This document shows, piece by piece, positions 20,531-60,140 of a stretch of DNA of 64,000 nucleotides. The stretch's first letter is position 1; every line of letters begins with the position of its first letter. The DNA comes from Octopus sinensis (taxonomy: Eukaryota), in the NCBI RefSeq assembly GCF_006345805.1, contig NC_042997.1, forward strand, positions 110,546,001 to 110,610,000, written 5' to 3'. Position numbers and translations under genes: made by a program. The notes beneath the pieces are model-generated. The model did not search any database. It saw nothing but the letters and a program-made list of their open reading frames with translations, and was not told the origin of the DNA.

Positions 20531-21997
20531 GTATGTATATATAGGAAAATGTGTTGTTGAAAATCTGCATGGAAACACGCCACCCTCTTTTGTTATATAT
20601 AATATAAATAGATATATATATATGCATATATACATATATGCACATATACATACATATATGCACATACTTACATATATATGCATATACAGGTACAGAATGT
20701 CACAAAACATAAACAACATGAAATACAAAAATGACATGGATTACAAAATACGAAAACAACATGGAAAATGAAGGCAAACCTGGGTATGAGAACAACGAGA
20801 GAAACAAATAGAAAGCAAGACAAGTAACAACATAAAGAATGACTCTTGATATATATATTATATTATTATATGATTGAACACCAGGCATCCATTTCCAAGT
20901 AAGTTTATATATAATTGAAACTTATAGGAAAGCAAAAGATGAAGACAGGTGTAGGAACAAGCAGGTGTATTAGTTTGATGCTTAGGAAAAATGGAAAAGT
21001 CTTTTACGTTTCGAGCCTAAGCTCTTCAGCAGAAAAGAATGAGAAAGTAAACAGAGAGAGAATGAAAAAAACTTGTAGATTTCAGCAGTCCAACATGGCC
21101 AATATCTATATATATATACTAGCATTATGACCCGTCTTTGCCGGGTCATAGTGCTAGTGCATGTATATATGTGTATATATATGTGTACATATTACATGTA
21201 CATCTATATATATATATATATATGTGTACATATTACATGTACATCTATATATATATATATATATGTGTACATATTACATGTACATCTATATATATATATA
21301 TATATGTGTACATATTACCTGTACATCTATATATATATATATATATGTGTACATATTACATCTATACATCTATATATATATATATATGTACATATTACAT
21401 CTATACATCTATATATATATATATATATGTGTGTACATATTACATCTATACATCTATATATATATATATATATATGTGTGTACATATTACATCTTACATC
21501 TATATATATATATATGTATATGGCTACATATTACATCTATACATCTATATATATATATATATATTATATATATTATATATAGATATATATATATATATAT
21601 GTGTGTACATATTACATCTATACATCTATATAATATATATATATGTGTACATATTACATCTATACATCTATATATATATATATATATATGTGTACATATA
21701 CCTATCTATACATCTTATATATATATTATATAGATATATATATATATGTGTACATATTACATCTATACATCTATATATATATATATATATATATGTGTAC
21801 ATATTACATCTATACATCTATATATATATATATATATGTTGTGTACAATTACATCTATACATCTATATATATATATATAATATATATATATGTGTACATA
21901 TTACATCTATATCATCTATATATATTATATAGTATGTGTACATATTACATCTATACATCTATATATATATATGTGTGTGTACATATTATTACATTCT

Positions 21998-22049
<52 letters not shown>

Positions 22050-22659
22050 ACATATTACATCTATACATCTATATATATTATATATATATTATATATATAT
22101 ATATATGTGTACATATTACATCTATACAATCTATATATATATATAGTGTACATATTACATCTATACATCTATACATATATATATATATGTGTACATATTA
22201 CATCTATACATCTATATATATATATATATATATGTGTACATATTACATCTATACATCTATATATATTATATATATATATGTGTACATATTACATCTATAC
22301 ATCTATATATATATATATATATATGTGTACATATTACATCTACATCTATATATTATATATATATGTGACATATTACATCTATACATCTATATATATATAT
22401 ATATATATAGTGTACATATACATCTATACATCTATATATATATATATATATATGTGTACATTACATCTATATATATATATATATATATATGTGTACATAT
22501 TACATCTATACATTATATATATATATATATGTGTACATATTACATCTATACATCTATATATATATATATATGTGTACATATTACATCTATACATCTATAT
22601 ATATATATACATATATATGTATACATATTACATCTATACATCTATATATATATACATCT

Positions 22660-22711
<52 letters not shown>

Positions 22712-23492
22712 ATATATACATATTATATATATATATATATACATCTATATAATACAAAATACAAAGCTATATCTTGATATCGCTAGTGATAACAATACTA
22801 AAAATATATAACAGACTGGAATTGTAGGACTATTCCATTTTTGCACACTAATTTTATTTTTAATTTATTTTCATTCATGTGAAACCACTTATTCAAGTTC
22901 AAGTCATTGATGCAATTTTATACCAATTGCTATTTTTACTTTTGTAATGTTACGATTATATTATACTTTAGTTTGATTTTAATTATTACTTACTACATAT
23001 AATTCAATTATTATTATTATCTCTAATTTTTATTGTTACAGTGAAAGTATCTGACATAAAATAGAGAAATGTTTTTGTTTCACTTTTAACACGTAATACT
23101 GAAATAGTGGAGAAGATATGATATTGCTATGGGCTCGCCCTAGGCAAGAAGTTGAACTTTTTTTTGCCCATGAAACTACATGGACCCTAAGTAAGGCAGG
23201 TGTAAAATTTGAATGAAATTGGTTGTGTAGTTCTCAAGTTTTAGGGAAACACACAAACAGACAGACACACATTCTCAGTTTTATATATATTGAGATGTAT
23301 ATATATATATATATAAGGATAAGATCGTTAATTTAAATTAAATAGCAATCTTATCAAGTGGTCATCATGGAAATAAAAACCTTCAAAGGTAATAATTATT
23401 ATTAAAATTATAACTTAGGGTGGTTTTAGAGATCATGGCTGCTATTTTCAGCATGGTAGTATCTCGTAGATACCCTAAGTTATAATTTTATT

Positions 23493-28205: not shown

Positions 28206-29699
28206 CACAATGCATGTCATGTATTAATGTCTGAGTTCTTCTGTAGCTCAGGGAACCTCATAGCTGAGACTCCTCCTCCTACATTCCAAGAAACCTCCAT
28301 TCATACCCTCCCCCAGTTCCTGTCCTGCATTGTTAACAATGTCAGGCAAGGGAGGTAACTCCCTATCTATAACACCCATAGCGCATTTCAGAATATCACA
28401 AAGGCTATTTTGTAATTTCCATTCATCCATTTTCTCTGCCAACTATTTCTGGGAGGAACTTGGCGATAAAGTTCTCAGGCTCCTCCACATAGGGTCCTAT
28501 CAGAAACAACCATTGCTACACTTTCCTGCTGGATTCCCAAGCATTGCCGACTAAAATTACGAATATTTATCCAACCATCTCATACTTGTCTACCCCTAGG
28601 TTTTCAGCCGGTTGACTCAGCTTGAAGAATGAAGAATTTGTTTTGCGATTCTCCCTGTGACATTCTAATTCCAGGTCCATATTACTAAATCTAGGATCTT
28701 TCAATGCAGAGAAGAAGTTGTAGCTCAACCTGGAAAGACATCCTGATCTCTGAGCTATGCACCCTGTCAAGTAACATTACCCCAGAGAGCCTTCAAAGGA
28801 CCCCCATTTTAACTGCTTCTATTCACAATCATACGCTTTCAGTTATTACCCAACATTTATTTGTTGCCACCATCACCTTATTGGCACATGTGCCGATGGC
28901 ACATGAAAAACAACATTCAAGCATGGTCGTTGCCAGTGCCGCCGGACTGGCCCTGTGCAGGTAGCACATAAAAAACACCTTTTGAGCATAGACGTTACCA
29001 GAACCACCTGACTGGCCCTTGTGCCGGTGGCATGTAAAAGCACCCACTACATTCTCGGAGTGGTTGGCATTAGGAAGGGCATCCAGCTGTATAAACTTTG
29101 CCAGATGAGACTGAAGCCTGGTGCAGCCATCTGGCTCACCAGTCCTCAGTGGAACCGTCCAACCCATGCCAGCATGGAAAGCAGAGGTTAAACAACAATG
29201 ACGATGATGATGATGATGATTCATGACTTGAAGTGAAGATAATGATTTTGGCATTTTTACCAATTTCTCCTCTTCTAAGAATCAAATGCTGAAGCTGGCA
29301 CTTTACTTTTCTAGCATCTGCAACTCCAGCATCCGATTCAGCCTCTTGTCTTCCATCATCATCATCATTTAACGTCCGCTTTCCATGCTAGCATGGGTTG
29401 GATGATTTGACTGAGGTCTAGCAAACCAGACTCCAATCTGATCTGGCAGAGTTTCTACAGCTGGATGCCCTTCCTAACGCCAACCACTCAGAGTGTAGTG
29501 GGTGCTTTTACATGCCACCGGCACGAGAGGCCAGTTTGGTGGTACTGGCAATGGCCACGCTCAAATGGTGCTTTTTACGTGCCACCTGCACAGGAGCCAA
29601 TCCAGCGGCACTGGCAACGACCTCGCTCGAATGTTTCACATATCACTTGTGAATATGAGCCCAAGATATGCAAATTCCACTTGTCTCAATAATGTTCTC

Positions 29700-31330: not shown

Positions 31331-33890
31331 GTATATATATATATATATATCAAAACAGAAGATTGGAACAATGTTTTGGTATTCTGTATTCACCATTACA
31401 TGTGTTTCATTTGCTAATAGGAGTTACAATATTGTACATATAGCAGGAAGCATGTATAATATTGTATCTCCTATAAGCAAATGAAATGGTGAATAAATAA
31501 TGCCAAAAATTTGTCCACACTCCTGTTTTGGTATTATTTCTATGCAGAAAATATTTCCCAGTATTTTCAATTCTTATGTATTCCTTGCACAAATATAGGC
31601 CTCACCGAGGCAATGACTAGTGACCGAGACCTTTGGAAAGATGCTGTGCTTGAGAAGACTCAGCAAGCCAAATGAGACAATAACCTCATGGCCTATGCCA
31701 GGGGTGTAACCAGCCCACTTATGCATACCTTTCCTTCATTGGACACTAAACTTTGCTTGTGAAGACCTGTTGAGGCAAGTGAAATCGAAATCAAATTCGA
31801 TGACTGGCATCCGTGCTAGTGGAGCGCTAAGAGCACCATCTGAGCGTGATCTTTGCCAGAGCAGCTAACTGGCTTCCTTGTTGGTGGCACGTAAAAAGCA
31901 CCATTTGAGCATGATCGTTACCAATGTCACCTTACTGGCACTTGTGCTGGTGGCACGTGAAAAAACATTTGAGTGAGGTCGTTGCCAGTGCTGCTGGACT
32001 GGCTCCTGTGCAAGTGGCACGTAAAAAACGCCATTTGAGCATGGTTTTTGCTAGTACCACCTGACTGGCCCTCATGCCGGTGGCACATAAAATGCACCCA
32101 CTACACTCTCGGAGTGGTTGGCATTAGGAAGGGCATCCAGCAGTAGAAACTCTGCCAGATCAGATTGGAGCCTGGTGCAGCCATCTGGTTCGCCAGTCCT
32201 CAGTCAAATCATCTAACCCATGCCAGCATGGAAAGCGGAGTCAAACGATGATGATGATATAACATACAGATCTAAGATACTGGAATTAGTAGATGTACTT
32301 CAAGAGGACACACACACACACACAGAGGCAGATAAACTAATCTCAATAAAAACAAACCACTACAAACCATTGATTCCGATAAATATTTTAGCTACTCGTT
32401 TATTATCTTCATTAAAATTCATTAAGTTTTATTGCACTTGTTACTATTGTTGTTGAAGCTGCTGCTGTTGTTGTAGTAAACAAACGAATGATTACAAAAG
32501 GTCGCAATGACCCAGAATTATGTCTTCAGTGACAACTGTTGACAAATTATTTACATAACACATCTCCTTCCTGTCATCCCTGCTACCACTCCACCATTAC
32601 TACCAAGTTCAGGTCAACCCGGAGAAAGCCTATCTCTGATAACAGCCATTCCAAATGTGACCATTCAGCCTTTTCTTTTTCTTCAGTAGTACATAGGACA
32701 CTTTAATCACACCAGGGAAGACAGAACAAATGATGTCCTGTTGTGAAGGTAAAACACATCAGGAGAGATTGGAAAATGGCTGAGGATAAGAACATCCAGC
32801 CTGAGGAAACAATGTCGAGAACTAGAAAACCATGAATGAGAAATGGTAACCTGATTTGTCTTAGAAAAAATTCCTTTTAATTAAGAACTTCCTTAAGGTA
32901 TGACAACCTGTTCAACCCATGCTAACATGCAAAACCAAGCATAAAATAATAATGAGGATGCTTTTGATATAGATTGGTGATGTATCATTTTGATAATGTA
33001 GATATTTGATAAGATTTTAATAACACAGGTGCCAGCACACCTGTGTGGCATAGGTATACAGGTATGGTTGTCTGGTTGAGAAGTTTGCTTCCCAATCACA
33101 CGGTTTCCGGTTCAGTCCCATTGCATGGCACCTTGGGCAAGTGTCTTCTACTATAGCCCTGAGATAACCAAAGCCTTGTGAATGAATTTGGTAGATGGAA
33201 ACTGAAAGAAGCCCCCATCATATATCATCATCATCATCATTATTTAATGTCTGTTTTCTATGCTGGCATGGATTGGGTGGTTTGACAGGAGATGGCAAAC
33301 TGGAGAGCTGCAACATGCTCCAAGTGTCTGTTTTGACAGTTTCTATAGCTGGATGCCCTTCCTAACACCAACAACATTACAGAGTGTACTGGGTGCTTTT
33401 TATGCTTGTGTGTGTGTCTGTCTGTCTCACTCTCCTTGTTTTGAAATCACATGACAGTTATCAACAAGTGTCACATCACAAGTAGTAGCTTTCGTTTCTA
33501 ATAGTCTACAAAACCACATCTAGTCACAGAGAAATTATCTCGCTTGGAAACAAGTGAGGGTTGGCAACAGGAAAGGCATCCAGACATAGAAAAATCTGCC
33601 TTAGCAAACCCCATCCGACTCCTGCAAGCATGGAAAGTGGATTTTATGACAATGAGGATTATGTTAATTACAGTGATTTGCATAATATTGAAGCAATTAT
33701 TTTTTTATTGTATGTATATCCCACCACTAATCACTCAACTGGAAAACTTAATTTACCAGCACAATGACTAGAAATAGCGACCAGAAATAATGACTTCTGA
33801 ATAATGATAAGAGTGGAATGTTGAGACAGAATAAAGCAATAATCTCAACAATATAGACAACATTCACAGAAACAATACAAAGAACTCTTT

Positions 33891-44051: not shown

Positions 44052-45750
44052 ATTATTATTTTTCCTTCTTTCTTCAAAATTTCTTCCGTTTCTCGCCGGG
44101 TATTTTCCGTACACCTAGGGCAGAGAAGCTCATTGCATGCATTCCCAGATTACACACGCAAATTCACAGGTAAAATATGTATTTAAAAAATTAATGAATA
44201 AATAAATTCATGAATGGATGTTGTTTTCACAGCGATAATGCTCTTCTCAGTACATGAGCCGTTCCAGTTAACACGATTTTTTGCACTTCCTGTAGGGATG
44301 GTAAGTCTGGTATCATTTTCAAATAGGTTTCAGTGCCTTTTTTTAATCATTCCTAGAGATCCTACAATCACTGGTACTGTAGTCGCCTTAAGATGCCACA
44401 TTTTTTCAATTTCTATTAGCAAGTCTTTATATTTACTGATCTTGTCAAATTCTTTCGCCGCTATATTGTGATCGCAAGGAATACTCATGTCAATTAATAA
44501 ACACATCTTTTTTGTCTGATCTTTTATAATAATATCCGGTTTATTAGCTTTTATAGTTTTGTCGGTATGTACGGGGAAGTCCCATAGAATCGACACATTT
44601 TCTCCTTCAATCACAGCTTCAGGATAGTGTTTATACCATTCGTCAGCAGTTTTGATTTTATAATGCCGACATATTGTCCAGTGTAAATACTGACCGACTC
44701 TGTAATGTCTTGCTTTATATTCTACAGGTGCTAAGATTCTACACTCTGAGATTAGATGGTCTATTGTTTCAATCTCATCGTTACAGAATCGGCATTTTGG
44801 GTCAGCTCCATTTTTTATCACATTGGCTTGGTAGTTCCGGGTTAATAAGCTTTGGTCTTGAGCAGCTAAATATGAAACCTTCACTCTCCGCTTTTAGCCC
44901 TGAGCTTCGTAACCATTGGTGCGTGTGTTTCTGGTCGACATCAGCTTGTTTGCTACGGGCTACATAATTGCCATCTGCTAGCTAATTTTTCATGTGCTTT
45001 TATCTTTGCAATTAATTTTATTTTATTTACACCAGCAGTTGGCGCATTTCCTTCGACCTGATCAATCTGGTGGGTATCTAAGAGATCAGTAGCGAATTTT
45101 TTGCTCTCTTTCAGAATAGAGTGAATTGTTTTCGGTCTTTCGTGTTTTTCAACAAGTTTTAGCATCCAATCGTTGGTTGCTTCAAGGTATTTGGCCAGTC
45201 CGATTGTGGTGGTTTTGTACGTAAGTTCAAGCTGGATCAAACCTCGTCCTCCTTGAGCTCTGGGAAGGTAAAGACGATCCACGTCTGCCTTTGGATGGTT
45301 CATTTTATTACAAGTCAGTAGCTTCAAGGTATTTGGCCAGTCCGATTGTGGTGGTTTTGTACGTAAGTTCAAGCTGGATCGAACCTCGTCCTCCCTGAGC
45401 TCTGGGAAGGTAAAGACGATCCACGTCTGCCTTTGGATGGTTCATCTTATTACAAGTCAGTAGCTTCAAGGTATTTGGCCAGTCCGATTGTGGTGGTTTT
45501 GTACGTAAGTTCAAGCTGGATCGAACCTCGTCCTCCCTGAGCTCTGGGAAGGTAAAGACGATCCACGTCTGCCTTTTGATGGTTCATCTTATTACAAGTC
45601 AGTAGCTTCAAGGTATTTGGCCAGTCCGATTGTGGTGGTTTTGTACGTAAGTTCAAGCTGGATCGAACCTCGTCCTCCCTGAGCTCTGGGAAGGTAAAGA
45701 CGATCCACGTCTGCCTTTGGATGGTTCATCTTATTACAAGTCAGTAGCTT
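44052..45750 (-). mobile_element. 5'-truncated R4/Dong-clade non-LTR retrotransposon (RLE endonuclease)
   Basis: HPKADVDRLYLPRAQGGRGL; CCHC knuckle CRFC...ETIDHLISEC; PD-(D/E)xK motif KPDIII...LLID; C-terminus ...VLRRALSL*; 3' end runs into AAAAATAATAAT(GAT)n. Confidence 0.9.
45183..45750 (-). repeat. Four tandem 142-bp copies of the R4 element 5' end
   Basis: Identical ORF starts at 45372, 45514 and 45656 (period 142). Confidence 0.93.
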
Positions 45751-48864: not shown

Positions 48865-49282
48865 TGTAGTGATGCTACAGTGTAGGGTTCGGCGCGCATG
48901 CGCAGAATGGGACTACTTCCGGGTGGCCACCGGAAGTCTTCCCCATGCGCATGTGCGGGAAAACATCTCTCGAGCCCGCGAACCTCAAATCTCTCTCTTC
49001 GGCTCAAGACAGCACTGCGATCGGTCACGGTTTTCCTGGCTCTGACAGCCACACACCAGCTTCAACCAACTTCAACCAACCTCAACGACCAACACCAGCA
49101 GTATATCAGAGGCTGTCTATTCCCCCATCAGACAACGTACAACCATGAATCAATAAACCAAGTTGTCTGTTCACCTTTAACCTGAGTTTCGTCTGTTTGT
49201 TTTCTACAAGAATTATTGTATGTGACTAGAAAGGATCTCGACACCCTGCCAGTGCTTCGATGATAGATCCTTTCACGTTACA
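48865..49282 (+). repeat. 5' LTR of Gypsy element
   Basis: TGTAGT...GTTACA, direct repeat of 58381-58798; contains AATAAA. Confidence 0.96.
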
Positions 49283-50431
49283 ATTGGTGACCCCTAGTTG
49301 AGAAAAAGAACAGGATAGAAGAAGACACAGCGAACAGGTTTTTTTTTGGGGCCGAAGAGCGCGGAAATTCACATTTATTTTCCTATTTTCTCCTTTTCAG
49401 CACGGCGAGGTGGGTAAAATAGCCTTATTCATCGCACACAGTACAAAAAAAAAAAAAAAAAACAAAGAAAAAAGAAAACACACACACATTCATTTTTTTT
49501 TCCTTTTCTGTATTTTGTTTTCCTTGTACACACCTATTCCTTTTTTTGCTACCCACGAGGTGCACACACAAACACAATTTTGAATTGCCTTCTCGGTTCC
49601 ACGTGTTCTCTCTCCACTTCTAGACCATACCTTCTGCCCCCTTCTCACAGATTCCTTCCGACAAAGGCATGGCTTCAGGTTTGCCTTCATGGTACTTGTT
49701 AATAATCGTGGTCCCGGTTTTGCACACGCGAATTCGCGCGCGCGCGCGCGCCAGACGTAGGTACTCGATACTCGAGATCCTACGAGGTGACTTGCGCATG
49801 CGCAGTGCAGAATTCGCGCGTGCGCGTTAAACCCCCCCCCCCGGAAAAAAAAAAGGATTTTTTTTAAAGATACCTTTCTGCTTTTTAACACAAAAAGGTG
49901 TTGGATTTAACTAAAAATATATATATGTGTGTGTTGTGTGTATATATAACATATTCAATTTTACACAAAAAAAATTACATAGTCGCTTTCCTCGCGGATT
50001 TACAGATAATGAATTAATTACTATTTTACAGAATAAAATTAATGAATTAATTATATAAATTAAATAATTCTTGAAAATTAATTATTATTAATACTCGAGA
50101 TCCTACGAGGTGACTTGCGCATGCGCAGTGCGCGATTCGCGCATGCGGGTTAAACCCCCCCCCCCGGAAAAAAAAAAGGATTTTTTTAAAGATACCTTGG
50201 TCGCTTTCCTCGCGGATTTACAGATAAATGAATTAATTACTATTTTACAGAATAAAATTAATGAATTAATTATATAAATTAAATAATTCTTGAAAATTAA
50301 TTATTATTAATAATATTTTTTGAACAAAGTAAAAAGTAATTACTTTTTTTTTACAGAAACGCGAACGGGGAATTTCAGTTTAAAGTTTATAAATAAATAC
50401 ATTTCATGTGTAATGTAAAATAGTAGTCAAT

Positions 50432-51580
50432 TAATTAAATACCTTCTTTTTCTGGGGTATTATTCGTTCAAACTCGTCACGTATTTGTAACTTTTCGATG
50501 TAAGTCTTAAAAAGTTGCAGCAGCTTAGCAGAAATGTCACGTTATAATTTCTACAATGCAATGGTTTCAATACACGCGGAAGATCATACCCATTCAAACT
50601 TTATATCATTCTGAAACATCTTTCAGATATTCATCACACGACCGTTTTCATTTTGTCCAAATATTTTTTTTCACAGAAATTCATCAAAATTGTGGAGATT
50701 TTATGACAGTGTAGCAAATTAGTAATCAACTAATTAAATACCTTCTTTTTCTGGGGTATTATTCGTTCAAACTCGTCACGTATTTGTAACTTTTCGATGT
50801 AAGTCTTAAAAAGTTGCAGCAGCTTAGCAGAAATGTCACGTTATAATTTCTACAATGCAATGGTTTCAATACACGCGGAAGATCATACCCATTCAAACTT
50901 TATATCATTCTGAAACATCTTTCAGAATATTCATCACACGACCGTTTTCATTTTGTCCAAATATTTTTTTTCACAGAAATTCATCAAAATTGTGGAGATT
51001 TTATGACAGTGTAGCAAATTAGTAATCAACTAATTAAATACCTTCTTTTTCTGGGGTATTATTCGTTCAAACTCGTCACGTATTTGTAACTTTTCGATGT
51101 AAGTCTTAAAAAGTTGCAGCAGCTTAGCAGAAATGTCACGTTATAATTTCTACAATGCAATGGTTTCAATACACGCGGAAGATCATACCCATTCAAACTT
51201 ATATCATTCTGAAACATCTTTCAGAATATTCATCACACGACCGTTTTCATTTTGTCCAAATATTTTTTTTCACAGAAATTCATCAAAATTGTTGGAGATT
51301 TTATGACAGTGTAGCAAATTAGTAATCAACTAATTAAATACCTTCTTTTTCTGGGGTATTATTCGTTCAAACTCGTCACGTATTTGTAACTTTTCGATGT
51401 AAACCTTTCAATGTAAGTCTTAAAAAGTTGCAGCAGCTTAGCAGAAATGTCACGTTATAATTTCTACCATGCAATGGTTTCAATACACGCGGAAGATCAT
51501 ACCCATTCAAACTTTATATCATCATGAAACATCTTTCAGAATATTCATCACACGACCGTTTTCATTTTGTCCAAAAATAC
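50432..51580. repeat. Tandem 300-bp repeat array in the left Merlin arm (about 3.8 units; about 1.9 inverted units at 53232-53795)
   Basis: Unit starts TAATTAAATACCTTCTTTTTCTGGGG at 50432, 50731, 51031, 51331. Confidence 0.92.
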
Positions 51581-51589
51581 ATCGGGAGA

Positions 51590-52480
51590 TCATACCCCTT
51601 CAAACTCTATACCATTCGGAAGATGTTTCAGAATATTCATCAAGCAATCGTGTGCAGTTTGCCCATATTGTTCCTTCCACAGAAACTCATCAAGGTACGA
51701 GTCCACCATGGTGGAATGTACCCCCATCATCGTTTTAAATTTTCTTTTGGCATTCTTCCAGTAACATTCCACAGAATTTGTGTGTACACCTGTTAGCGGA
51801 TCCACAAAATTCTGGGAATGGTTTACTGTGAAATGGATGTATTTTGGTGTCACATCCATTTCTGCAATACCATTATAGGCGGGCCAGCAATCCGAATGAA
51901 TTGTTGTGCCCGGTCTAATAAATTTTTTGATGATGGGTAGCAGAGTTTCCGAGGAACGGTCAGCTACGAACAGTATGAAGCCTTTTTTGTCTTCTCTGTC
52001 GTACCCTCCAAAGACCCATCTCTCTTGTGGCGTTCTTCCTCTATTGTATTTTCTCTCACATCAGACTTTCATCTACTTCAACAATGTGTCCGACACCACC
52101 AATTTGGTATGGATTCTTCATTAGATTATTGCTACAGATATCTCGCATGTATTGATACCATTGAATAACGCTAGGTTTTGACAATCCAGTCATTGCTATT
52201 GCTCCGGTTATTGTTAGGTTACTGCCCCAACAATATATAACATAAATGAAATCGTGCAGTTTCAACTTGCTATTTTCGAGATACGATTTCTTTCTAATCG
52301 ACTCTTTTTCCCCTTTGTGAGTTGGGCAGCGAAAAATTTTTTCCTGGTTGTGTTTTATAAGAGTCATCTCTCTATGGCATTTTGAGCAAATTGGAGTTGA
52401 GGACTCAACACTTTTTTGTCCTTTAGGAATGAATAGATACTGTCAAAATCTTTTACGATGCTTTCTATCTCATACAACAT
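51590..52480 (-). pseudogene. Merlin/ISXO2-like DDE transposase (about 295 aa) with a few single-base frameshifts
   Basis: Stitched frame: MLYEIESIVKDF...PICSNCHREM...FRCP (Zn ribbon)...QWYQYMRDIC...GVGHIVEVDES...RKYNRGR...WVFGG...TTIHSDCWPAY...HFTVNHSQNFVDP.TGVHTNSVECYW...YLDEFLWK. The D/D/E triad (VDES, HSD, NSVE) is intact. Confidence 0.92.
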
Positions 52481-54532
52481 TTTTTCTTAATTTAACTCAG
52501 TTCAACTGATGAAGATAAACTGAAAATAAAGTTATTTTCAGTATCAGTTAGCTGACTATCATTCAGTTAGCTCTGATTGGTTAGATTTTAGAACTTTCTC
52601 TGTCCCCTCTTTCAAACTAATTTTTGTTGTGGGGGGGGGGGGGAAAGATGAACGATTTAAAATAAATATATCTTAATTGTAGTGTGAGAAAAGTATATAT
52701 ATTCTGATGATAAAATATATTCTTTCAAAACATTTGTTAGTCCTACTATGAAAGATTGTTTTGGGCTGAAACCCAAGTTAACGAAAGTACATGAATAAGG
52801 ATTGACTGTCATGATGTTGAGTCTTATTAGATTCTTGTCCGATTCAGTATTTTGTCATGTGCTTTCTGAAGTAGGCAATAAAAACCTTATAAACAAACTG
52901 TTATCTACATAATACTGTGGTAATTAGACAAACATTAACTGAAATTAATTATGCCTTTCCTAACAGAAAATGACATAATAGTATTTATTATGTGAACATG
53001 TAAAGGAAACTGAAAATTGTGATATGTTCCTCTCATTACTGGCACTTATTAACTTGAGAAAAATAAAAGGCCACATATAGAATGAGATATTCGAAAATAA
53101 AAAAATGTTAAAAGATACTCCTCGGAATTAAAATCATGACAAAGATTTTCAAAATCCCTTTTTTGCGATAGATGGAGATTGCCTGAAGTAAATAAGGGAG
53201 AAGGAGAGAGAAGACAGCAGAAGGAACAGCATTGATGAATTTCTGTGAAAAAAAATATTTGGACAAAATGAAAACGGTCGTGTGATGAATATTCTGAAAG
53301 ATGTTTCAGAATGATATAAAGTTTGAATGGGTATGATCTTCCGCGTGTATTGAAACCATTGCATTGTAGAAATTATAACGTGACATTTCTGCTAAGCTGC
53401 TGCAACTTTTTAAGACTTACATCGAAAAGTTACAAATACGTGACGAGTTTGAACGAATAATACCCCAGAAAAAAGAAGGTATTTAATTAGTTGATTACTA
53501 ATTTGCTACACTGTCATAAAATCTCCACAATTTTGATGAATTTCTGTGAAAAAAAATATTTGGACAAAATGAAAACGGTCGTGTGATGAATATTCTGAAA
53601 GATGTTTCAGAATGATATAAAGTTTGAATGGGTATGATCTTCCGCGTGTATTGAAACCATTGCATTGTAGAAATTATAACGTGACATTTCTGCTAAGCTG
53701 CTGCAACTTTTTAAGACTTACATCGAAAAGTTACAAATACGTGACGAGTTTGAACGAATAATACCCCAAAAAAGAAGGTATTTAATTAATTGACTACTAT
53801 TTTACATTACACATGAAATGTATTTATTTATAAACTTTAAACTGAAAATTCCCCGTTCGCGTTTCTGTAAAAAAAAGTAATTACTTTTACTTGTTCAAAA
53901 AATATTATTAATAATAATTATTTTCAAGAATTATTTAATTTATATAATTAATTCATTAATTTTATTCTGTAAAATAGTAATTAATTCATTTATCTGTAAA
54001 TCCGCGAGGAAAGCGACCAAGGTATCTTAAAAAAATCCTTTTTTTTTTCCGGGGGGGGGGGTTAACCCGCATGCGCGAATCGCGCACTGCGCATGCGCAA
54101 GTCACCTCGTAGGATCTCGAGTATTAATAATAATTAATTTTCAAGAATTATTTAATTTATATAAATTATTCATTATTTTATTCTGTAAAATAGTAATTAA
54201 TTCATTTATCTGTAAATCCGCGAGGAAGCGACTATGTAATTTTTTTGTGTAAAATTGAATATGTTATATATACACACACACACACACATATATATATTTT
54301 TAGTTAAATCCAACACCTTTTTGTGTTAAAAAGCAGAAAGGTATCTTTAAAAAAAATCCTTTTTTTTTTCCGGGGGGGGGGGGTTTAACGCGCACGCGCG
54401 AATTCTGCACTGCGCATGCGCAAGTCACCTCGTAGGATCTCGAGTATCGAGTACCTACGTCTGGCGCGCGCGCGCGCGCGAATTCGCGTGTGCAAAACCG
54501 GGACCACGATTATTAACAAGTACCGCCTTCAT

Positions 54533-57500
54533 TTACGGGGGATATGGGCCTGTGGTTTGCCCAAGTGGAGTGGTATTTTGTTGCACATGCCATTTCTCCA
54601 CAGCAGCAGTTGCACCTGCTATATTCCGGCTTACATCCCCGACTCGCCGCATCGATCAGGGATCTAATAATAAGTCCCCACCCGGATGCACATACGCGTC
54701 TGTGAAAGCAGAAATCCTCCGCCGCAACACACGTTCGGGGAGAGCAATATTCAGATTGCCACGATGGCCGATGGAATACTGGAATTTCCGAATCCATCTC
54801 CATCGCGAGGCCTCTGTGCATGTATAGGGGGCCCTGCGCAAATTTCACTAGCCGAGCGGATTGATGCGCTCTCACGCGGCGAATCGACGATCTATCCCGT
54901 GCGATCGAGCGCCGACAACGCAGTCGTAGTCGCTCTACCAAAAGGGCAGATCGGTGTACCCAGCCGTGCACTTTCAAGCCCTCGGAAAACTAAATCCGGA
55001 GGAGGTGAGCACGTCACCTTCTTCCATCTCGTTTCCAAACATCGTGCATTCTATGTAAAAGATCTGGTGTCGAAGACATTCTTCATGGTAGACACGGTTC
55101 CTGTTGCAGCATCTGGCCCCTTCGTCTGGCTGCAGACAAGCCGAAGCGCTCTTCGATTGTCTTGCATGCTATTGACTCGTCTCCCATAACCACTTACGGT
55201 CAGATTTCGCTGCGCCTCAACCTCAACCTTCGCCGAGACTTTCGATGGGTTTTCGTCATCGCTGACATCCCACATCCTATTCTCGGCGCTGATTTCCTGG
55301 ATAGGTTTAACCTATTGGGTGGATGTCAGGCGTCGGAGGCTTCTTGATAGCACGACGTCGCTCTCTACACCCGACTGGGAGTTCCACCACTGCGGTCCTT
55401 AGCCCGACATTCTTTGTTGCCACCTCTGGAGACCCATTTCACTCTCTTTGGTTTCATTTCCGGAGCTAGTGGACATTGCCTTTAAACCGGAAAATCCTAC
55501 CCACTCGACCCTCCATTTCATCACCACCAATGGGCCACCTGTTTCTCACGCCCTTCTCACGCCCCCGGCGCCTAGCGCCAGACCGACTTAAAACGGCCAG
55601 AGCCGAGTTTGAGCACATGCTTCAACTTGGCATTATACGCCCCTCCACCAGCCCATGGGCATCTCCCCTTCATTTGGCGCGAAAGGGCGAGTCTGATTTT
55701 CGCCCGTTTGGAGACTATCGACGCCTCAATGCCGTCACAATAGCCGATCGCTATCCGATTAGAAATCTCCGGACTTTACAGCAAATCTCCATGGTTGTAC
55801 CATTTTTTCGAAGGTCGATCTGATACGCGCTTACCACCAAATACCGGTCAACCCAGCCGACGTTCCAAAAACTGCAATCACTACCCCTATACCCGGTTTG
55901 GGTGTTTTGAGTTTTTGTACATGAGTTTCGGTTTGCGGAATGCTACTAGCACCTTCCAGCGTTTCATTGATGAGGTTGTCCGCGGTCTTGATTTTGTGTT
56001 TGCCTATGTCGATGACATACTCATTGCGAGCGACACACGAGAAAATCATCTCTCGCACCTTTCTAACTCTTCCAGCGTCTTCGCGCGTATAGCATACGCA
56101 TAAACCCCGACAAGTGTGTTTTCGGACGCTCTTCCCTAGATTTTCTAGGGCATCATATTGATTCGACTGGAATCAGCCCCCTCTCGTCAAAAGTCGATGC
56201 CATTCAACGCATCGCACCCCCCACTTCCTTGCGCCAGCTCAGGCATTATCTAGGGATGGTCAATTTCTACCGACGCTTCATTCCCGGTTGTGCAGATAAG
56301 CTGCTACCTCTCACCAGGCTGTTAAAGGACTCTCCTAGAAAGGACAGTCAAGTCACCCTCTCTGTTGAGGCAGTGACAGCCTTTGAGTCCATTAAGAAGG
56401 AGCTGGCTTCTGTTTCTTTGCTTGCACATCCAGTTCCTGGTGCTTCTCTCTCTTTGACTGTGGACGCATCGGACACTGCCATTGGCGCTGTGTTACAACA
56501 CACAGTGGATGACCATGTTCGACCTCTAGCCTTCTTTTCCCGTCAACTGCAACCAGCTGAACGACGATACAGCACCTTTGATCGTGAGCTCCTAGCGATC
56601 TATCTATCGGTTCGTCATTTCCAGCATCACTTGAAGGGCGAGATTTTGTGATCTATACGGATCACAAGCCCCTTACGTTTGCCCTGTTTTCAAAAACGGA
56701 CAAACTCTCACCCCGTGCTTTTCGGCACCTGGATTTTATCTCTCAATTTACTAGCAACATTCGACACATACCTGGAAAAGAGAACGTTCCTGCTGACGCT
56801 CTCTCTCCTTCCAGTTTGCGCCCTTTCGTCTCCTGCTGCTATCGACTTAGCTGCCATATCGCAGGAGCAGCCACCTTTGGCGTCGTTAGATTTAACTTCT
56901 CCCAAGTTCTCCTGTTGCCAGTTTTCCTACCTTCCGCTTCCGTCAGCCGAAGGCACCATTCTTTGTGACACTTCAACTGGATCTCCCAGGCCACTGGTGC
57001 CTGAGACCCATCAACGCTCAGTGTTTGAAGCACTGCACTCCTTATCACATCCTGGCATCGCTGCCGCCACCCTCAAACTAATCACTTGCTTCGGTTTTTC
57101 TGGCCGAATATGCGTCGCACAATTACTTGTTGGACACGCCCTGCTCCAAGTGTCAACGATCCAAGATTCAACGGCACGTTCGTGCCCCGCTTGGACAATT
57201 TCCCCCCACGGAGGAGGCCGTTTTCGCCATGTCCACATCGATCTGGTTGGACTATGGCCTGTGAGTCGCGGGTTCTCTTTCTATTAACTGTGTCGATCGT
57301 CTCTCCCGCTGGCCAGAAGCCATTCCGATAGCAGACATTTCTGCTGAGACTGTTGCGCGAGCTTTCGTTTCAAACATGGATTTCTCGCTTCGGAGTCCCG
57401 TCCCGATTGACAACTGATCGTGGACGACAGTTTGAGGCCTCGCTATTTCGCGAATTGTCGCGAATTTTGGGTATGCACCATATCCACACCACAAGCTACC

Positions 57501-58270
57501 ATCCAGCGTCTAATGGATTGGTTGAGCGGTTCCATAGACAGCTCAAGGCCGCTCTTCGTGCCTCTTCGGACCCACAGTCCTGGATCGAATTTCTGCCCAT
57601 TGTGCTTCTCGGCTGTCGGACTGCTGTCAAGGCAGACCTGGGGTTTTCTGCTGCAGAGCTGCTGTATGGTACCACACTGGCATTGCCCGGTACGATGTTG
57701 GTGCCAGACACTTCCCCGCCCCATGATCCGGCGACCTATGTCACCAGACTGCGGGAATATTTTCAAACCTTCCGCCCATGCTTCCCAGAAAGCAATCTCC
57801 ACCGTCCCATCTTCCACCGGATATGAACACCTGGTCGCATGTTTTTGTTCGGGACGATTCTGTGAAGGGCCCACTTGTTTCTCCCTAAAAGGACCTTTTC
57901 GTGTGCTTTCTCGCACACCAAGGTTTTCACGATTGAGATAAATGGTCGTTCGGAGACCGTTTCCGTGGACCGTTTAAAAAAAAGGCACATTTTGAGACGT
58001 CTTCATCTTTTGATGACAACCTTGACACACCCACCTATGCACCTTTAACAACACTTTCACCTGCACAAACGCCTTCACCTGCACAAGCGCCTTCACCTGC
58101 ACAAACGCCTTCAACCTGCACAAACACCTTCACCGGCTCCTACAACACCACCCTCGCCGTCAACGGGTGCCCCGAGCACACCGTATGTTACAAAATCGGG
58201 CAGAACAGTGCATTGGCCCAAGAAACTTTCAAAAACAATTTACATTTAACTTTCTTTAAAATGTTTCTTA
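54533..58270 (+). pseudogene. Gypsy gag-pol reading frame, frameshifted (gag start ATG at 49669 is separated by the Merlin insertion)
   Basis: Removing 49691-54532 restores MASGLPSFTGDMGLWFAQVEWYF (gag). Downstream ORF fragments give protease, RT, RNase H and integrase motifs in Gypsy order. Confidence 0.9.
58055..58135 (+). repeat. 18-bp tandem repeat (TTCACCTGCACAAACGCC) in the Gypsy pol tail, encoding PSPAQT-type repeats
   Basis: 4-5 imperfect units visible. Confidence 0.8.
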
Positions 58271-58380
58271 TTGTATAATAGTATGTACCAAGTCTTCTGG
58301 GGGATCGGCAAGCCTTCTGTTTTCTGCAGCACACCACCACAATATTCTGGTTGCCGTACTTCGCACTCGGAGGGGAGCCC

Positions 58381-58798
58381 TGTAGTGATGCTACAGTGTA
58401 GGGTTCGGCGCGCATGCGCAGAATGGGACTACTTCCGGGTGGCCACCGGAAGTCTTCCCCATGCGCATGTGCGGGAAAACATCTCTCGAGCCCGCGAACC
58501 TCAAATCTCTCTCTTCGGCTCAAGACAGCACTGCGATCGGTCACGGTTTTCCTGGCTCTGACAGCCACACACCAGCTTCAACCAACTTCAACCAACCTCA
58601 ACGACCAACACCAGCAGTATATCAGAGGCTGTCTATTCCCCCATCAGACAACGTACAACCATGAATCAATAAACCAAGTTGTCTGTTCACCTTTAACCTG
58701 AGTTTCGTCTGTTTGTTTTCTACAAGAATTATTGTATGTGACTAGAAAGGATCTCGACACCCTGCCAGTGCTTCGATGATAGATCCTTTCACGTTACA
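58381..58798 (+). repeat. 3' LTR of Gypsy element
   Basis: Same sequence as 48865-49282; preceded by the PPT and followed by the GAAG TSD. Confidence 0.96.
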
Positions 58799-59499: not shown

Positions 59500-60140
59500 A
59501 TCATCATCATCGTTTAACGTCCGTTTTCCGTGCTAGCACGGGTTGGAGGGTTTGACCGGGGTCTGGGAAGCCAGGAGGCTGCACTAGGCTCCAGTCTGAT
59601 CTGGCAGTGTTTCAACAGCTGGATGCCCTTCCTAACTCCAACCACTCCATGAGTGTAGTGGGTGCTGCTTTTTACGTGCCACCGGCACAGGTGCCAGGGG
59701 AGGCTGGCAGCGGCCACGATTGGTTGGTGCTTTTTACATGCTGCCAGCACAGAAGCCAGTCAAAGTGGTGCTGGCATCAGCCATATTTGGATGGTGCTTT
59801 TTACATGCCACCGGCACAGGTATCACAACTACAATTTCCATTTGATATTTATTTTGATGTTGGTGTACTTGACTCAATAGATCTCCTCAAGCACAGCAGG
59901 TCACCCTACGATCAAAGGTAAGCACAGCAGGTCGTTCTGCAATCCAAGATACTTTGGATGGGCTGGGGCTATGCGAAACTGGTGCAGGAAGCAATCATGA
60001 ACTCACATTATTTGTCGGGTCTTTGCAGTCACAGCATATCTCCAGAGATCTTGGTCTTTCGTTATTGCTTCTGTGAGGCCCAACATTCAAAGGTCATATT
60101 TGACTACCTCATCCCATGTCTTCCTGGATCTACCTTAAGA
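59500..60140 (-). mobile_element. SINE-like retroposon with a (GAT)n tail and internal tandem ATGGTGCTTTTTACGTGCCACC units (family A; many copies, e.g. 960-1260, 7560-7990, 28860-29220, 29355-29640, 31620-32255)
   Basis: Recurring CATCATCGTTTAACGTCCGCTTTCCATGCTAGCATGGGTTGG...CTGGATGCCCTTCCTAACGCCAACCAC sequence; an 8-bp TSD is visible around the copy at 16832-16972. Confidence 0.85.

What the first reader, a model, noticed from the sequence alone, without database searches (positions are those of the whole stretch)
50432..51720. The TIR tandem repeats are built from decayed pieces of the element's own transposase gene
Seen: about 115 bp of each 300-bp unit is homologous to the transposase 3' end. 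On the minus strand the unit reads NFDEFL*KKIFGQNENGRVMNILKDVSE*YKV*, versus YLDEFLWKEQYGQTAHDCLMNILKH in the gene at 51590-51705. Directly adjacent, in the opposite orientation, the unit has ATGCAATGGTTTCAATACACGCGGAAGATC (QWFQYTRKI), which matches 24/30 nt of the gene's ATTCAATGGTATCAATACATGCGAGATATC (QWYQYMRDI, about 52137-52166). Inference: a collapsed, inverted transposase relic was amplified and copied into both arms. The gene is therefore flanked by sense and antisense copies of its own sequence, a possible built-in source of dsRNA or small-RNA self-regulation.
Basis: partly seen in the sequence, partly recalled or inferred. Interest (0 to 1): 0.75.

Follow-up and report, generated by a model that had tools for sequence, protein, structure and literature searches.

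The report
Octopus Merlin transposon with gene-derived arm repeats
A cut-and-paste "Merlin" transposon in a cephalopod-like genome has unusually long inverted ends, and their 300-bp repeats each carry a decayed copy of the last 104 bases of its own transposase gene; this is most simply a structural by-product of end extension, not a demonstrated regulatory device.

Summary
The main observation holds. Each 300-bp unit carries about 120 nt that are 79% identical (95/120) to the 3' end of the transposase gene plus 14 nt of its flank (window 51576-51693). BLASTN gives E 1.6e-22, and the Smith-Waterman score is 109 against a shuffle maximum of 35.

The gene's C-terminus is conserved in distant relatives, while the units carry stop codons. 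The units are therefore the derived copies.

The second claim, an inverted N-terminal 30-mer, is borderline: 20/23 core, E 0.008, shuffle p about 0.01, and no extension. Seventeen of its 30 nt also lie in the segment that is colinear with the live gene's own 3' flank.

The element is a Merlin-superfamily transposon at 49691-54524. It has an 8-bp target duplication (GCCTTCAT), 5'-GG termini and a DDE_Tnp_IS1595 transposase with two frameshifts. It sits inside a very young LTR retrotransposon.

Its arms are 1.3 kb and 1.9 kb (2.0 kb counting the gene's own end), several times the published Merlin range. The right arm is a 98.6% inverted copy of the outer 1297 bp of the left arm.

My best reading is a tandem duplication spanning the ORF end and its 3' flank, followed by copying into the other arm, as documented for Galileo.

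The dsRNA idea is not supported for the coding sequence, because the longest exact match is 17 nt. No other copy could be retrieved. Interest is modest.

The parts
49683..49690 (.). Left copy of the 8-bp target-site duplication GCCTTCAT
   Evidence: Read directly. It is identical to 54525-54532.
49691..54524 (-). The whole Merlin-superfamily DNA transposon (4834 bp). Its termini read 5'-GGTACTTGTTAATAATCGTGGTCCCGG.
   Evidence: Inverted repeats reach exactly these ends (I5). The TSD flanks them. The terminal 25 bp are shared with a related element in L001.
49691..50416 (.). Outer part of the left arm: 77-bp terminus, then two copies of a GC-rich block (49768-49867, 50091-50190) and of an AT-rich block (about 49983-50093, 50201-50312)
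   Evidence: D8, D9, D11. It is mirrored in the right arm (I5, I10, I11, I13).
50417..51575 (.). Left-arm array of the 300-bp unit, 3.8 copies. The innermost copy is the most divergent: it has a 15-bp insertion and its gene-derived part is cut to 92 nt.
   Evidence: TRF (period 300, 97% matches).
50868..50987 (-). Gene-derived segment of one unit (representative). The others are at 50569-50687, 51168-51286 and 51482-51573 (truncated).
   Evidence: BLASTN gives 78-79% identity to 51576-51693 in the same orientation, E 1.6e-22 to 2.2e-14.
51155..51184 (+). The 30-mer ATGCAATGGTTTCAATACACGCGGAAGATC (representative copy), a possible inverted copy of 52137-52166
   Evidence: It matches 24/30 nt, E 0.008, shuffle p about 0.01, which is borderline.
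51576..51693 (-). The live gene's own 3' end (codons for LDEFLWKEQYGQTAHDCLMNILKHLPNGIEFEGV, stop at 51590-51592) plus 14 nt of flank. This is the source of the unit segment. It lies 92 nt, not 300 nt, from the last unit copy.
   Evidence: (D4).
51590..52480 (-). Transposase gene with a DDE_Tnp_IS1595 domain. The reading frame is interrupted by two frameshifts, one near 52400-52420 in an A-run and one at about 52059-52060. The D (VEVDES), D (IHSDCW) and E (NSVECYW) motifs are present.
   Evidence: (E 8.7e-21).
52137..52166 (-). Gene segment encoding IQWYQYMRDI, the proposed source of the inverted 30-mer
52481..53231 (-). Unique region upstream of the gene (presumed 5' UTR or promoter), with no similarity to the arms except a homopolymer run
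53232..54524 (.). Right arm, an inverted copy of the outermost 1297 bp of the left arm (98.6%, 2 mismatches). It holds exactly 2.0 units, with gene-derived segments at 53232-53351 and 53533-53652. Its inner end coincides with the first base of the gene homology (TTGATGA).
54525..54532 (.). Right copy of the target-site duplication GCCTTCAT
48865..49282 (+). 5' LTR of the host LTR retrotransposon into which the Merlin element inserted. The 3' LTR is at 58381-58798.
   Evidence: The two LTRs are 418 bp and 100% identical. They have TG...CA ends and GAAG on both sides. RT, RNase H and integrase domains lie at 55.8-57.8 kb.

Best explanation
The region is the left arm of a Merlin-superfamily cut-and-paste transposon (49691-54524) whose terminal inverted repeats have grown to 1.3 kb on the right and 1.9 kb on the left (2.0 kb counting the gene's own 3' end).

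The 300-bp repeat most likely began as a tandem duplication of a block spanning the last 104 nt of the transposase reading frame, the stop codon, and the roughly 180-190 nt of non-coding sequence that originally lay between the gene and the outer arm. The copy attached to the gene stayed under coding constraint. The extra copies decayed to 79% identity, with stops and an indel. They were then re-amplified or homogenised as a minisatellite and copied into the opposite arm. This is the same pair of processes documented for the P-superfamily element Galileo: tandem-repeat expansion inside the TIR, and recruitment of internal sequence next to the TIR.

What is shown:
- the homology and its direction (gene to unit);
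- the element boundaries and family;
- the near identity of the two arms.

What is inferred:
- the order of events;
- the mechanism of copying between arms (recombination or template switching during break or gap repair);
- that the units are by-products with no required function.

At most, the units may add secondary transposase-binding DNA, or make the arms a longer hairpin in read-through RNA.
For: **Family and boundaries.**
- 8-bp TSD and GG termini.
- DDE_Tnp_IS1595 domain, E 8.7e-21.
- The closest proteins are Octopus bimaculoides ISXO2-like transposases at 70-76% identity.
- The terminal 25 bp are conserved with the related element L001, which has a 9-bp TSD and TIRs of only about 355 bp.

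**Homology.** Identity is 79% over 120 nt, E 1.6e-22, score 109 against a shuffle maximum of 35.

**Direction.** The gene's C-terminus is conserved across 14 homologues. The unit copies have stops. The differences are spread over codon positions 9/7/5, as expected for unconstrained decay.

**Tandem-duplication anatomy.**
- The homology starts abruptly at TTGATGA, with nothing upstream of it.
- The outermost unit runs into unique subterminal sequence.
- The live gene end lies in series with the array (D4).
- The innermost unit is the most divergent.

**Arms.** The right arm is an inverted copy of the outer 1297 bp of the left arm, with 2 mismatches. The arms hold different unit numbers, 2.0 and 3.8.

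**Comparison with other Merlins.** Four other Merlin loci show no extra copy of their gene's 3' end and have short TIRs.

**Precedent.** Galileo TIR tandem repeats differ in number between arms, and 121 bp of the post-ORF spacer were recruited into its TIRs (PMC3573991). Internal tandem repeats are known in Merlin (PMC8101967).
Against: - Only one copy of this family could be examined, so the order of events is not observed.
- The inner end of the right arm coincides to the base with the start of the gene homology. A random breakpoint would do this about 1-2% of the time, so a single older rearrangement breakpoint, or a hairpin-base mechanism, may be involved.
- The last unit and the live gene end are 92 nt apart, not 300, which requires a further 208-nt deletion.
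- The jump from 79% (gene versus units) to 98-100% (unit versus unit, arm versus arm) needs either a long decay followed by recent homogenisation, or arms acquired from a diverged sister family.
- The borderline inverted N-terminal match (p about 0.01), if real, indicates a more complex rearrangement.
- No terminal-TIR motif recurs in the units, so a binding-site role has no support here.
Confidence: 0.62

Rival explanations
1. An internally collapsed, rearranged transposase remnant, with an inverted N-terminal piece abutting the C-terminal piece, arose as a deletion derivative or by abortive gap repair with templated filler. It was then amplified into a 300-bp array and installed in both arms.
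For: - The inverted 30-mer lies directly next to the C-terminal segment.
- It shows 24/30 = 80% identity, the same level as the C-terminal piece (79%).
- It is the best hit of the whole central region against the arm, E 0.008, with shuffle p about 0.01.
- From general knowledge of P, Ac/Ds and other elements, short inverted filler copied from nearby sequence is a known product of abortive gap repair.
Against: - The match is short (23-30 nt), was found post hoc, and has no extension.
- 17 of its 30 nt also align in direct orientation with the 14-17 nt immediately after the live gene's stop codon. The motif therefore belongs to the functional gene's own 3' flank.
- The remaining roughly 165 nt of the unit show no similarity to any part of the gene.
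Confidence: 0.2
2. Built-in self-regulation. Sense and antisense gene-derived units give double-stranded or hairpin RNA whose small RNAs repress the transposase, as an internal equivalent of maize Mu killer.
For: - Antisense copies lie upstream and sense copies downstream of the gene.
- The arms are 98.6% complementary over 1.3 kb.
- The gene's stop codon is 14 nt from the array, and no AATAAA or ATTAAA occurs on the gene strand before the element's end. Any 3' UTR would therefore consist of unit sequence that the other arm complements.
- Hairpin-driven silencing is established for Mu killer and Ac killer (PMC3440606 and PMC13635294, listed).
Against: - Against the coding sequence the units are only 79% identical. 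The longest exact run is 17 nt, the best 21-mer has 2 differences and the best 28-mer has 3. Perfect-match siRNAs cannot arise.
- Any long-TIR element would have the same hairpin potential, so gene-derived origin adds nothing to it.
- No transcript or small-RNA data were available.
- The units decayed as neutral sequence.
Confidence: 0.1
3. The units are retained because they carry extra transposase-binding sites that help synapsis, as shown for the long TIRs of Galileo and the subterminal repeats of other superfamilies.
For: - This is a convergent feature of several superfamilies, discussed in PMC3573991 and PMC3688188 (listed).
- The unit holds a perfect 9+9-bp palindrome, ATTCTGAAA-CATC-TTTCAGAAT, which is imperfect in the gene.
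- The unit sequence is kept nearly identical in both arms.
Against: - No 9-12-mer of the terminal 80 bp recurs in the units; the terminal motif recurs only in the outer GC-rich block.
- Relatives transpose with TIRs of 49-355 bp and without such units.
- High identity is equally explained by recent amplification.
Confidence: 0.12
4. Chimeric origin. The arms, with their units, come from a diverged sister Merlin family or non-autonomous derivative and were joined to this gene by recombination. On this view the relic derives from a relative's transposase rather than from the element's own gene.
For: - There is a large gap between 79% (gene versus units) and 98-100% (units and arms).
- The junction with the gene is out of register: 92 nt instead of 300 nt.
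- Chimeric copies are documented for Galileo.
Against: - The unit translation shares lineage-specific residues with this gene (GQ and MNILK) that the closest O. bimaculoides relatives lack; they have GKT and NVVKH or NVLKH.
- No sister family was available to test this.
Confidence: 0.12
5. Assembly artefact, either a palindromic chimera or a mis-assembled repeat array.
For: - Many homopolymer-length differences separate the arms (16 gap positions against 2 mismatches).
- There are frameshifts in the transposase and in the host retrotransposon's pol, even though the LTRs are identical. This suggests indel errors in the assembly.
Against: - A perfect 8-bp TSD flanks both ends.
- The termini are conserved with an independent relative.
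- About 1.5 kb of unique centre, carrying most of a coherent gene, separates the arms.
- The unit numbers in the two arms differ, which is not what a fold-back read artefact gives.
Confidence: 0.04

Closest known systems
Merlin superfamily of eukaryotic DNA transposons (related to bacterial IS1016/IS1595; Feschotte 2004, summarised in PMC8101967)
   Same: - DDE_Tnp_IS1595 transposase.
- 8-bp target-site duplication and 5'-GG termini.
- Abundant in Octopus bimaculoides (191 sequences reported).
- Internal tandem repeats are already noted in several Merlin families.
   Different: - Published TIR lengths are 24-462 bp. Here the arms are 1293 bp and about 1.9-2.0 kb, with a 300-bp minisatellite inside both.
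- Part of the minisatellite derives from the ORF's own 3' end.
- The relatives sampled here have TIRs of 49-355 bp and no such copies.
Galileo (P superfamily, Drosophila) and Foldback-like long-TIR elements such as Tetris
   Same: - Long, internally repetitive TIRs.
- Tandem repeats of about 136-210 bp whose number differs between the two arms.
- TIR extension by recruiting the sequence that lies next to the TIR, including 121 bp of the spacer after the coding segment (PMC3573991; PMC4079207 listed).
   Different: - A different superfamily (P/THAP versus Merlin/IS1595).
- In the passages of the Galileo paper that I read (a term search of PMC3573991), the recruited sequence is non-coding spacer and the longest TIRs were in non-autonomous copies. 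Here the recruited block crosses the stop codon into the ORF, in a gene-bearing copy.
Mu killer / Ac killer (maize): inverted duplications of transposase sequence that trigger small-RNA silencing
   Same: Transposase-derived sequence is present in inverted orientation near TIR sequence, so a read-through transcript could fold back (for the literature; for the anatomy).
   Different: - The killers are separate rearranged loci with near-identical copies of kilobases of the target.
- Here the relic is 120 nt, 79% identical, sits inside the element itself, and has no exact run above 17 nt.
- No RNA evidence is available.
Bacterial insertion sequences whose transposase reading frame ends inside the terminal inverted repeat
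   Same: The end of the gene and the inverted repeat overlap, so the other end carries an inverted copy of the gene's last bases (general knowledge of IS elements; not tested here).
   Different: In IS elements the overlap is a few to tens of bases of a short IR and is not tandemly amplified. Here 120 nt are involved, amplified 3.3 and 2 times, and diverged from the live gene end.

Membership tests
Merlin superfamily (DNA transposon, TIR order) | Transposase with the DDE_Tnp_IS1595 (ISXO2-like) catalytic domain | tested here: met
   PF12762, E 8.7e-21, 75 bits against a cut-off of 27. The D/D/E motifs VEVDES, IHSDCW and NSVECYW were located. Homologues are annotated as ISXO2-like.
Merlin superfamily (DNA transposon, TIR order) | 8- or 9-bp target-site duplication | tested here: met
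   GCCTTCAT at 49683-49690 and 54525-54532.
Merlin superfamily (DNA transposon, TIR order) | Terminal inverted repeats beginning 5'-GG | tested here: met
   Both ends read GGTACTTGTTAATAATCG.... The related element L001 has the same start.
Merlin superfamily (DNA transposon, TIR order) | TIR length within the described range (24-462 bp). This is descriptive rather than defining. | tested here: not met
   The arms are 1293 bp and about 1885-2003 bp. The range is quoted in PMC8101967.
Merlin superfamily (DNA transposon, TIR order) | Intact, potentially autonomous reading frame | tested here: not met
   Two frameshifts, near 52400-52420 and at about 52059. They may be real or may be assembly indels.
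Galileo/Foldback-type long-TIR architecture | TIRs of about 1 kb or more containing tandem repeats whose number can differ between arms | tested here: met
   3.8 units on the left and 2.0 on the right, at 98.6-100% identity.
Galileo/Foldback-type long-TIR architecture | TIR extension by recruitment of internal sequence adjacent to the TIR | tested here: met
   The right arm ends with an inverted copy of the gene's last 104 nt plus flank.
Galileo/Foldback-type long-TIR architecture | P-superfamily (THAP) transposase and 7-bp TSD | tested here: not met
   IS1595-type DDE domain and 8-bp TSD. The resemblance is in architecture only.
Mu killer-type hairpin silencer | Inverted duplication of transposase sequence nearly identical to the target over hundreds of bases or more | tested here: not met
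   Only 120 nt at 79% identity, with a longest exact run of 17 nt.
Mu killer-type hairpin silencer | Transcription through the inverted repeat and production of small RNAs that silence the element | not testable with these tools
   No expression or small-RNA data were available.

The most novel reading that the evidence does not exclude
The long arms act as a built-in governor. The transposase mRNA has no poly(A) signal before the array, so its 3' UTR consists of unit sequence. Read-through transcripts containing both arms fold into a 1.3-kb hairpin, and the small RNAs made from it target that UTR. A Merlin family would then carry its own copy-number-dependent silencing trigger, seeded by sequence recruited from its own gene end.
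Probability: 0.08. Interest if true: 0.6.

Novelty: new variant of a known kind. Interest (0 to 1): 0.3.

Why it matters
This element documents, in a cephalopod-type genome, a Merlin transposon whose inverted ends are several times longer than any described for the superfamily. It also shows how such ends can grow, by duplicating and recruiting the sequence next to them, here across the stop codon into the gene.

That extends to a second, unrelated superfamily the TIR dynamics worked out for Galileo. It also gives a dated example of a transposon-borne minisatellite: an old relic at 79% identity that was re-amplified to near identity.

The practical consequences are modest. Repeat annotators should expect transposase-like fragments inside the TIRs of this family, and gene predictors may call spurious ORFs there.

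The regulatory idea would be of wider interest only if RNA data supported it.

Tried and rejected
1. **Looking for other copies of the family.**
   - The rest of the window gave no BLASTN hit.
   - An exact-product look-up of the 89-aa C-terminal ORF found nothing on record.
   - A protein-database search with concatenated spurious ORFs from the arms and units returned 3744 word candidates, none significant.
   - Two scans of metagenome contigs, one with the terminal-TIR consensus and one with a unit 26-mer, gave no matches.
   - The O. bimaculoides homologue P0001 has no contig on record, and P0006 lies on a 1-kb contig without flanks.
2. **Extending the gene-to-unit homology upstream of TTGATGA.** By eye, a possible 14-nt-gap alignment seemed to appear, but it was not better than shuffles (p 0.14-0.37).
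3. **Homology of the unit's non-coding part to the rest of the gene or to the 5' region.** Nothing beyond the 23-mer and a homopolymer run.
4. **Terminal-TIR motifs inside the units as candidate binding sites.** None found.
5. **The idea that the array overwrote the gene's C-terminus.** Rejected, because that C-terminus is conserved in distant homologues.
6. **Relatives with the same architecture.** L001, L003, L004 and L005 lack any second copy of their gene's 3' end.
Full report
**What is at the coordinates.**
Tandem Repeats Finder reports a 300-bp unit, 3.8 copies, 97% matches, at 50417-51575. The repeat finder shows the same unit in inverted orientation at 53232-53803, with stretches up to 304 nt that are 100% complementary between the two sides.

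**The element.**
- The inverted repeats run outward to 49691 and 54524.
- Both ends read 5'-GGTACTTGTTAATAATCGTGGTCCCGG and are flanked by the same 8 bases, GCCTTCAT, at 49683-49690 and 54525-54532.
- The gene (51590-52480, minus strand) carries the ISXO2-like DDE domain PF12762 (E 8.7e-21). The three catalytic motifs are present.
- Its reading frame is interrupted by two frameshifts, one in an A-run near 52400-52420 and one at about 52059.
- The nearest proteins are Octopus bimaculoides ISXO2-like transposases at 70-76% identity. The window therefore probably comes from a cephalopod, although the organism was not identified directly.
- These features meet the published definition of the Merlin superfamily: IS1595-type DDE domain, terminal GG, 8-9-bp TSD (PMC8101967).
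- The exception is TIR length. The published range is 24-462 bp. Here the right arm is 1293 bp, and the left arm is 1885 bp, or 2003 bp if the gene's own end is counted.

**Nesting and age.**
The element sits in the leader of an LTR retrotransposon whose two 418-bp LTRs are 100% identical (48865-49282 and 58381-58798). RT, RNase H and integrase domains lie at 55.8-57.8 kb. The Merlin insertion is therefore very recent.

**The C-terminal claim.**
- BLASTN of the element against itself aligns 51576-51693 with every unit: 79% over 120 nt, E 1.6e-22 for full copies. The left-arm copies are in the gene's orientation and the right-arm copies are inverted.
- A Smith-Waterman score of 109 compares with 22.3 +/- 2.5 (maximum 35) for dinucleotide shuffles.
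- The aligned stretch is the last 104 nt of the reading frame, including the stop codon at 51590-51592, plus 14 nt beyond it.
- An alignment of 14 homologues shows that the gene's C-terminal motif (SYLDEFLWRE.YGKT..F.N.L.H) is conserved down to 42-50% identity.
- The unit copies read NFDEFL*KKIFGQNENGRVMNILKDVSE*, with in-frame stops. Their differences from the gene are spread evenly over codon positions, 9/7/5.

The gene is therefore the source and the units are unconstrained derivatives. The units share GQ and MNILK with this gene but not with the nearest O. bimaculoides relatives. This points to this lineage's own gene as the source.

**The N-terminal claim.**
The 30-mer is present in all six units and matches 24/30 nt of 52137-52166 in opposite orientation.
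- Statistically it is borderline. The local core is 20/23, with a score of 31 against a 99th-percentile shuffle score of 30 and a maximum of 35.
- BLASTN gives E 0.008, and this is the top hit of the 1.5-kb central region against the left arm.
- The protein-level score of 43 is reached by 0.8% of shuffles.
- The match does not extend.
- Its last 17 nt (AATACACGCGGAAGATC) are also the outer end of the segment that aligns in direct orientation with the live gene's own flank (AATACATCGGGAGATC, 51576-51591).

If the similarity is real, for example as a short templated filler from a repair event, it was already part of the functional gene's 3' flank before the unit was amplified. It was not part of a separate collapsed gene copy. 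No other part of the unit resembles the gene or its upstream region. I regard this claim as unresolved. Its identity (80%) equals that of the C-terminal piece, which keeps it alive.

**Anatomy that bears on origin.**
1. Gene-to-unit homology begins abruptly at TTGATGA. The 90-100 nt upstream show nothing above chance.
2. At its outer edge, the first unit grades into unique subterminal sequence at about 50400-50417.
3. The live gene end lies in series with the array but 92 nt, not 300 nt, after the last unit's copy (D4). This implies a 208-nt deletion, which also hides whether the gene's original flank continued like the non-coding part of the unit.
4. The innermost unit is the most divergent, at 92-96% with a 15-bp insertion.
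5. The right arm is an inverted copy of the outermost 1297 bp of the left arm, with only 2 mismatches and 16 gap positions, mostly homopolymer lengths. It ends exactly at the first T of TTGATGA.

Taken together, the simplest history has four steps:
- a tandem duplication of a block spanning the ORF end and its 3' flank;
- decay of the free copies;
- later re-amplification or homogenisation;
- copying into the other arm.

The exact coincidence in point 5 is not explained by a random breakpoint. It suggests that TTGATGA marks one older rearrangement breakpoint inherited by all copies. This could be an inverted duplication that first made the long right arm, or breakage at the base of the hairpin that the arms can form. 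Both are inference only.

**Comparison with relatives.**
- A 66%-identical relative on an ENA contig (L001) has nearly the same terminal 25 bp (GGTACTCCTTAACAACAGTGGTCCC), a 9-bp TSD and TIRs of about 355 bp. It has a 125-bp tandem repeat on one side only, and no second copy of its gene end.
- Three more distant Merlin loci (L003-L005) also lack extra copies. The Tigriopus element has 49-bp TIRs.

The hyper-extended, gene-derived arms are therefore a derived feature of this family, not a general Merlin trait. No further copy of this family could be retrieved.

**Function.**
- No motif of the terminal 80 bp recurs in the units. The terminal GAATTCGCGCG motif recurs only in the outer GC-rich block. 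A binding-site role for the units is therefore unsupported here, although it is shown for Galileo's long TIRs (PMC3688188, listed; PMC3573991).
- For the small-RNA idea, the gene and the units share no exact run above 17 nt. The best 21-, 24- and 28-nt windows have 2, 2 and 3 differences. Perfect-match siRNAs against the coding sequence are excluded, and only mismatch-tolerant targeting is conceivable.
- The arms could form a 1.3-kb hairpin in any read-through transcript. The gene strand also has no AATAAA or ATTAAA between the stop codon and the element's end. A 3' UTR made of unit sequence is therefore plausible and would be complementary to the other arm. That property belongs to the long TIRs as such, not to their gene-derived origin, and it cannot be tested without RNA data.

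**What is known.**
The closest documented precedent is Galileo in Drosophila mojavensis. There, tandem repeats inside the TIRs expand and contract independently in the two arms, and internal sequence next to a TIR is recruited to lengthen it. This includes 121 bp of the spacer after the coding segment (PMC3573991). Internal tandem repeats have been noted in Merlin families (PMC8101967). Hairpin-triggered silencing by inverted transposase duplications is known from Mu killer and Ac killer, but the defining feature of high identity over long stretches is not met here.

**Verdict.**
- This is a new structural variant of a known kind of element, of modest interest.

Noticed in passing
window 48865-58798: The Merlin element is nested in the leader region of an LTR retrotransposon with 418-bp LTRs that are 100% identical (48865-49282 and 58381-58798). 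The LTRs have TG...CA ends and GAAG on both sides. RT, RNase H and integrase domains follow in Ty3/gypsy order, but the pol region is split into many short ORFs. Identical LTRs alongside a fragmented pol suggest either a non-autonomous copy or indel errors in the assembly.
   Followed up: partly
window 50907-50928 versus 51613-51633: Inside the gene-derived segment, the unit has a perfect 9+9-bp palindrome (ATTCTGAAA CATC TTTCAGAAT). The live gene has an imperfect one whose central 4 nt are the reverse complement. This stretch matches the gene better in inverted than in direct orientation (score 31). That looks like a quasi-palindrome corrected or flipped by template switching.
   Followed up: partly
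window 49768-50312 and 53906-54447: The outer part of each arm is itself a duplication. A GC-rich block (CTCGAGATCCTACGAGGTGACTTGCGCATGCGCAGTGC..., followed by C11 GG A10 GG T7-8 homopolymer runs) and an AT-rich TAATTAA-type block each occur twice per arm. About 115 bp are inserted between them in the outer copy.
   Followed up: no
window 52621-52643: A G13 run followed by AAAG lies upstream of the transposase gene. It is the complement-type match of the C11GGA10 runs in the arms. Homopolymers of this length are prone to length errors in long-read assemblies.
   Followed up: no
window 7722-7945, 28899-29039, 29501-29633, 31882-32092, 59659-59821: Short arrays with 64-67-bp periods share a core of the type GGTGCTTTTTACGTGCCACCGGCACAGG, found in both orientations. 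This is probably a dispersed SINE or satellite-like family of this genome.
   Followed up: no
window 45179-45750; 6320-6570; 21164-22751: Other conspicuous tandem arrays: 142 bp x 4.0 (98% matches), 31 bp x 8.1 (95%), and a 1.6-kb degenerate (TA)n tract.
   Followed up: no
L001 9856-10399 and 10530-11030: The related Merlin element on the ENA contig has a 125-bp x 4.3 tandem repeat. It also has a dense cluster of GGAATACCCAAC motifs in both orientations between its gene and its right TIR. These are candidates for subterminal binding-site repeats in that family.
   Followed up: no
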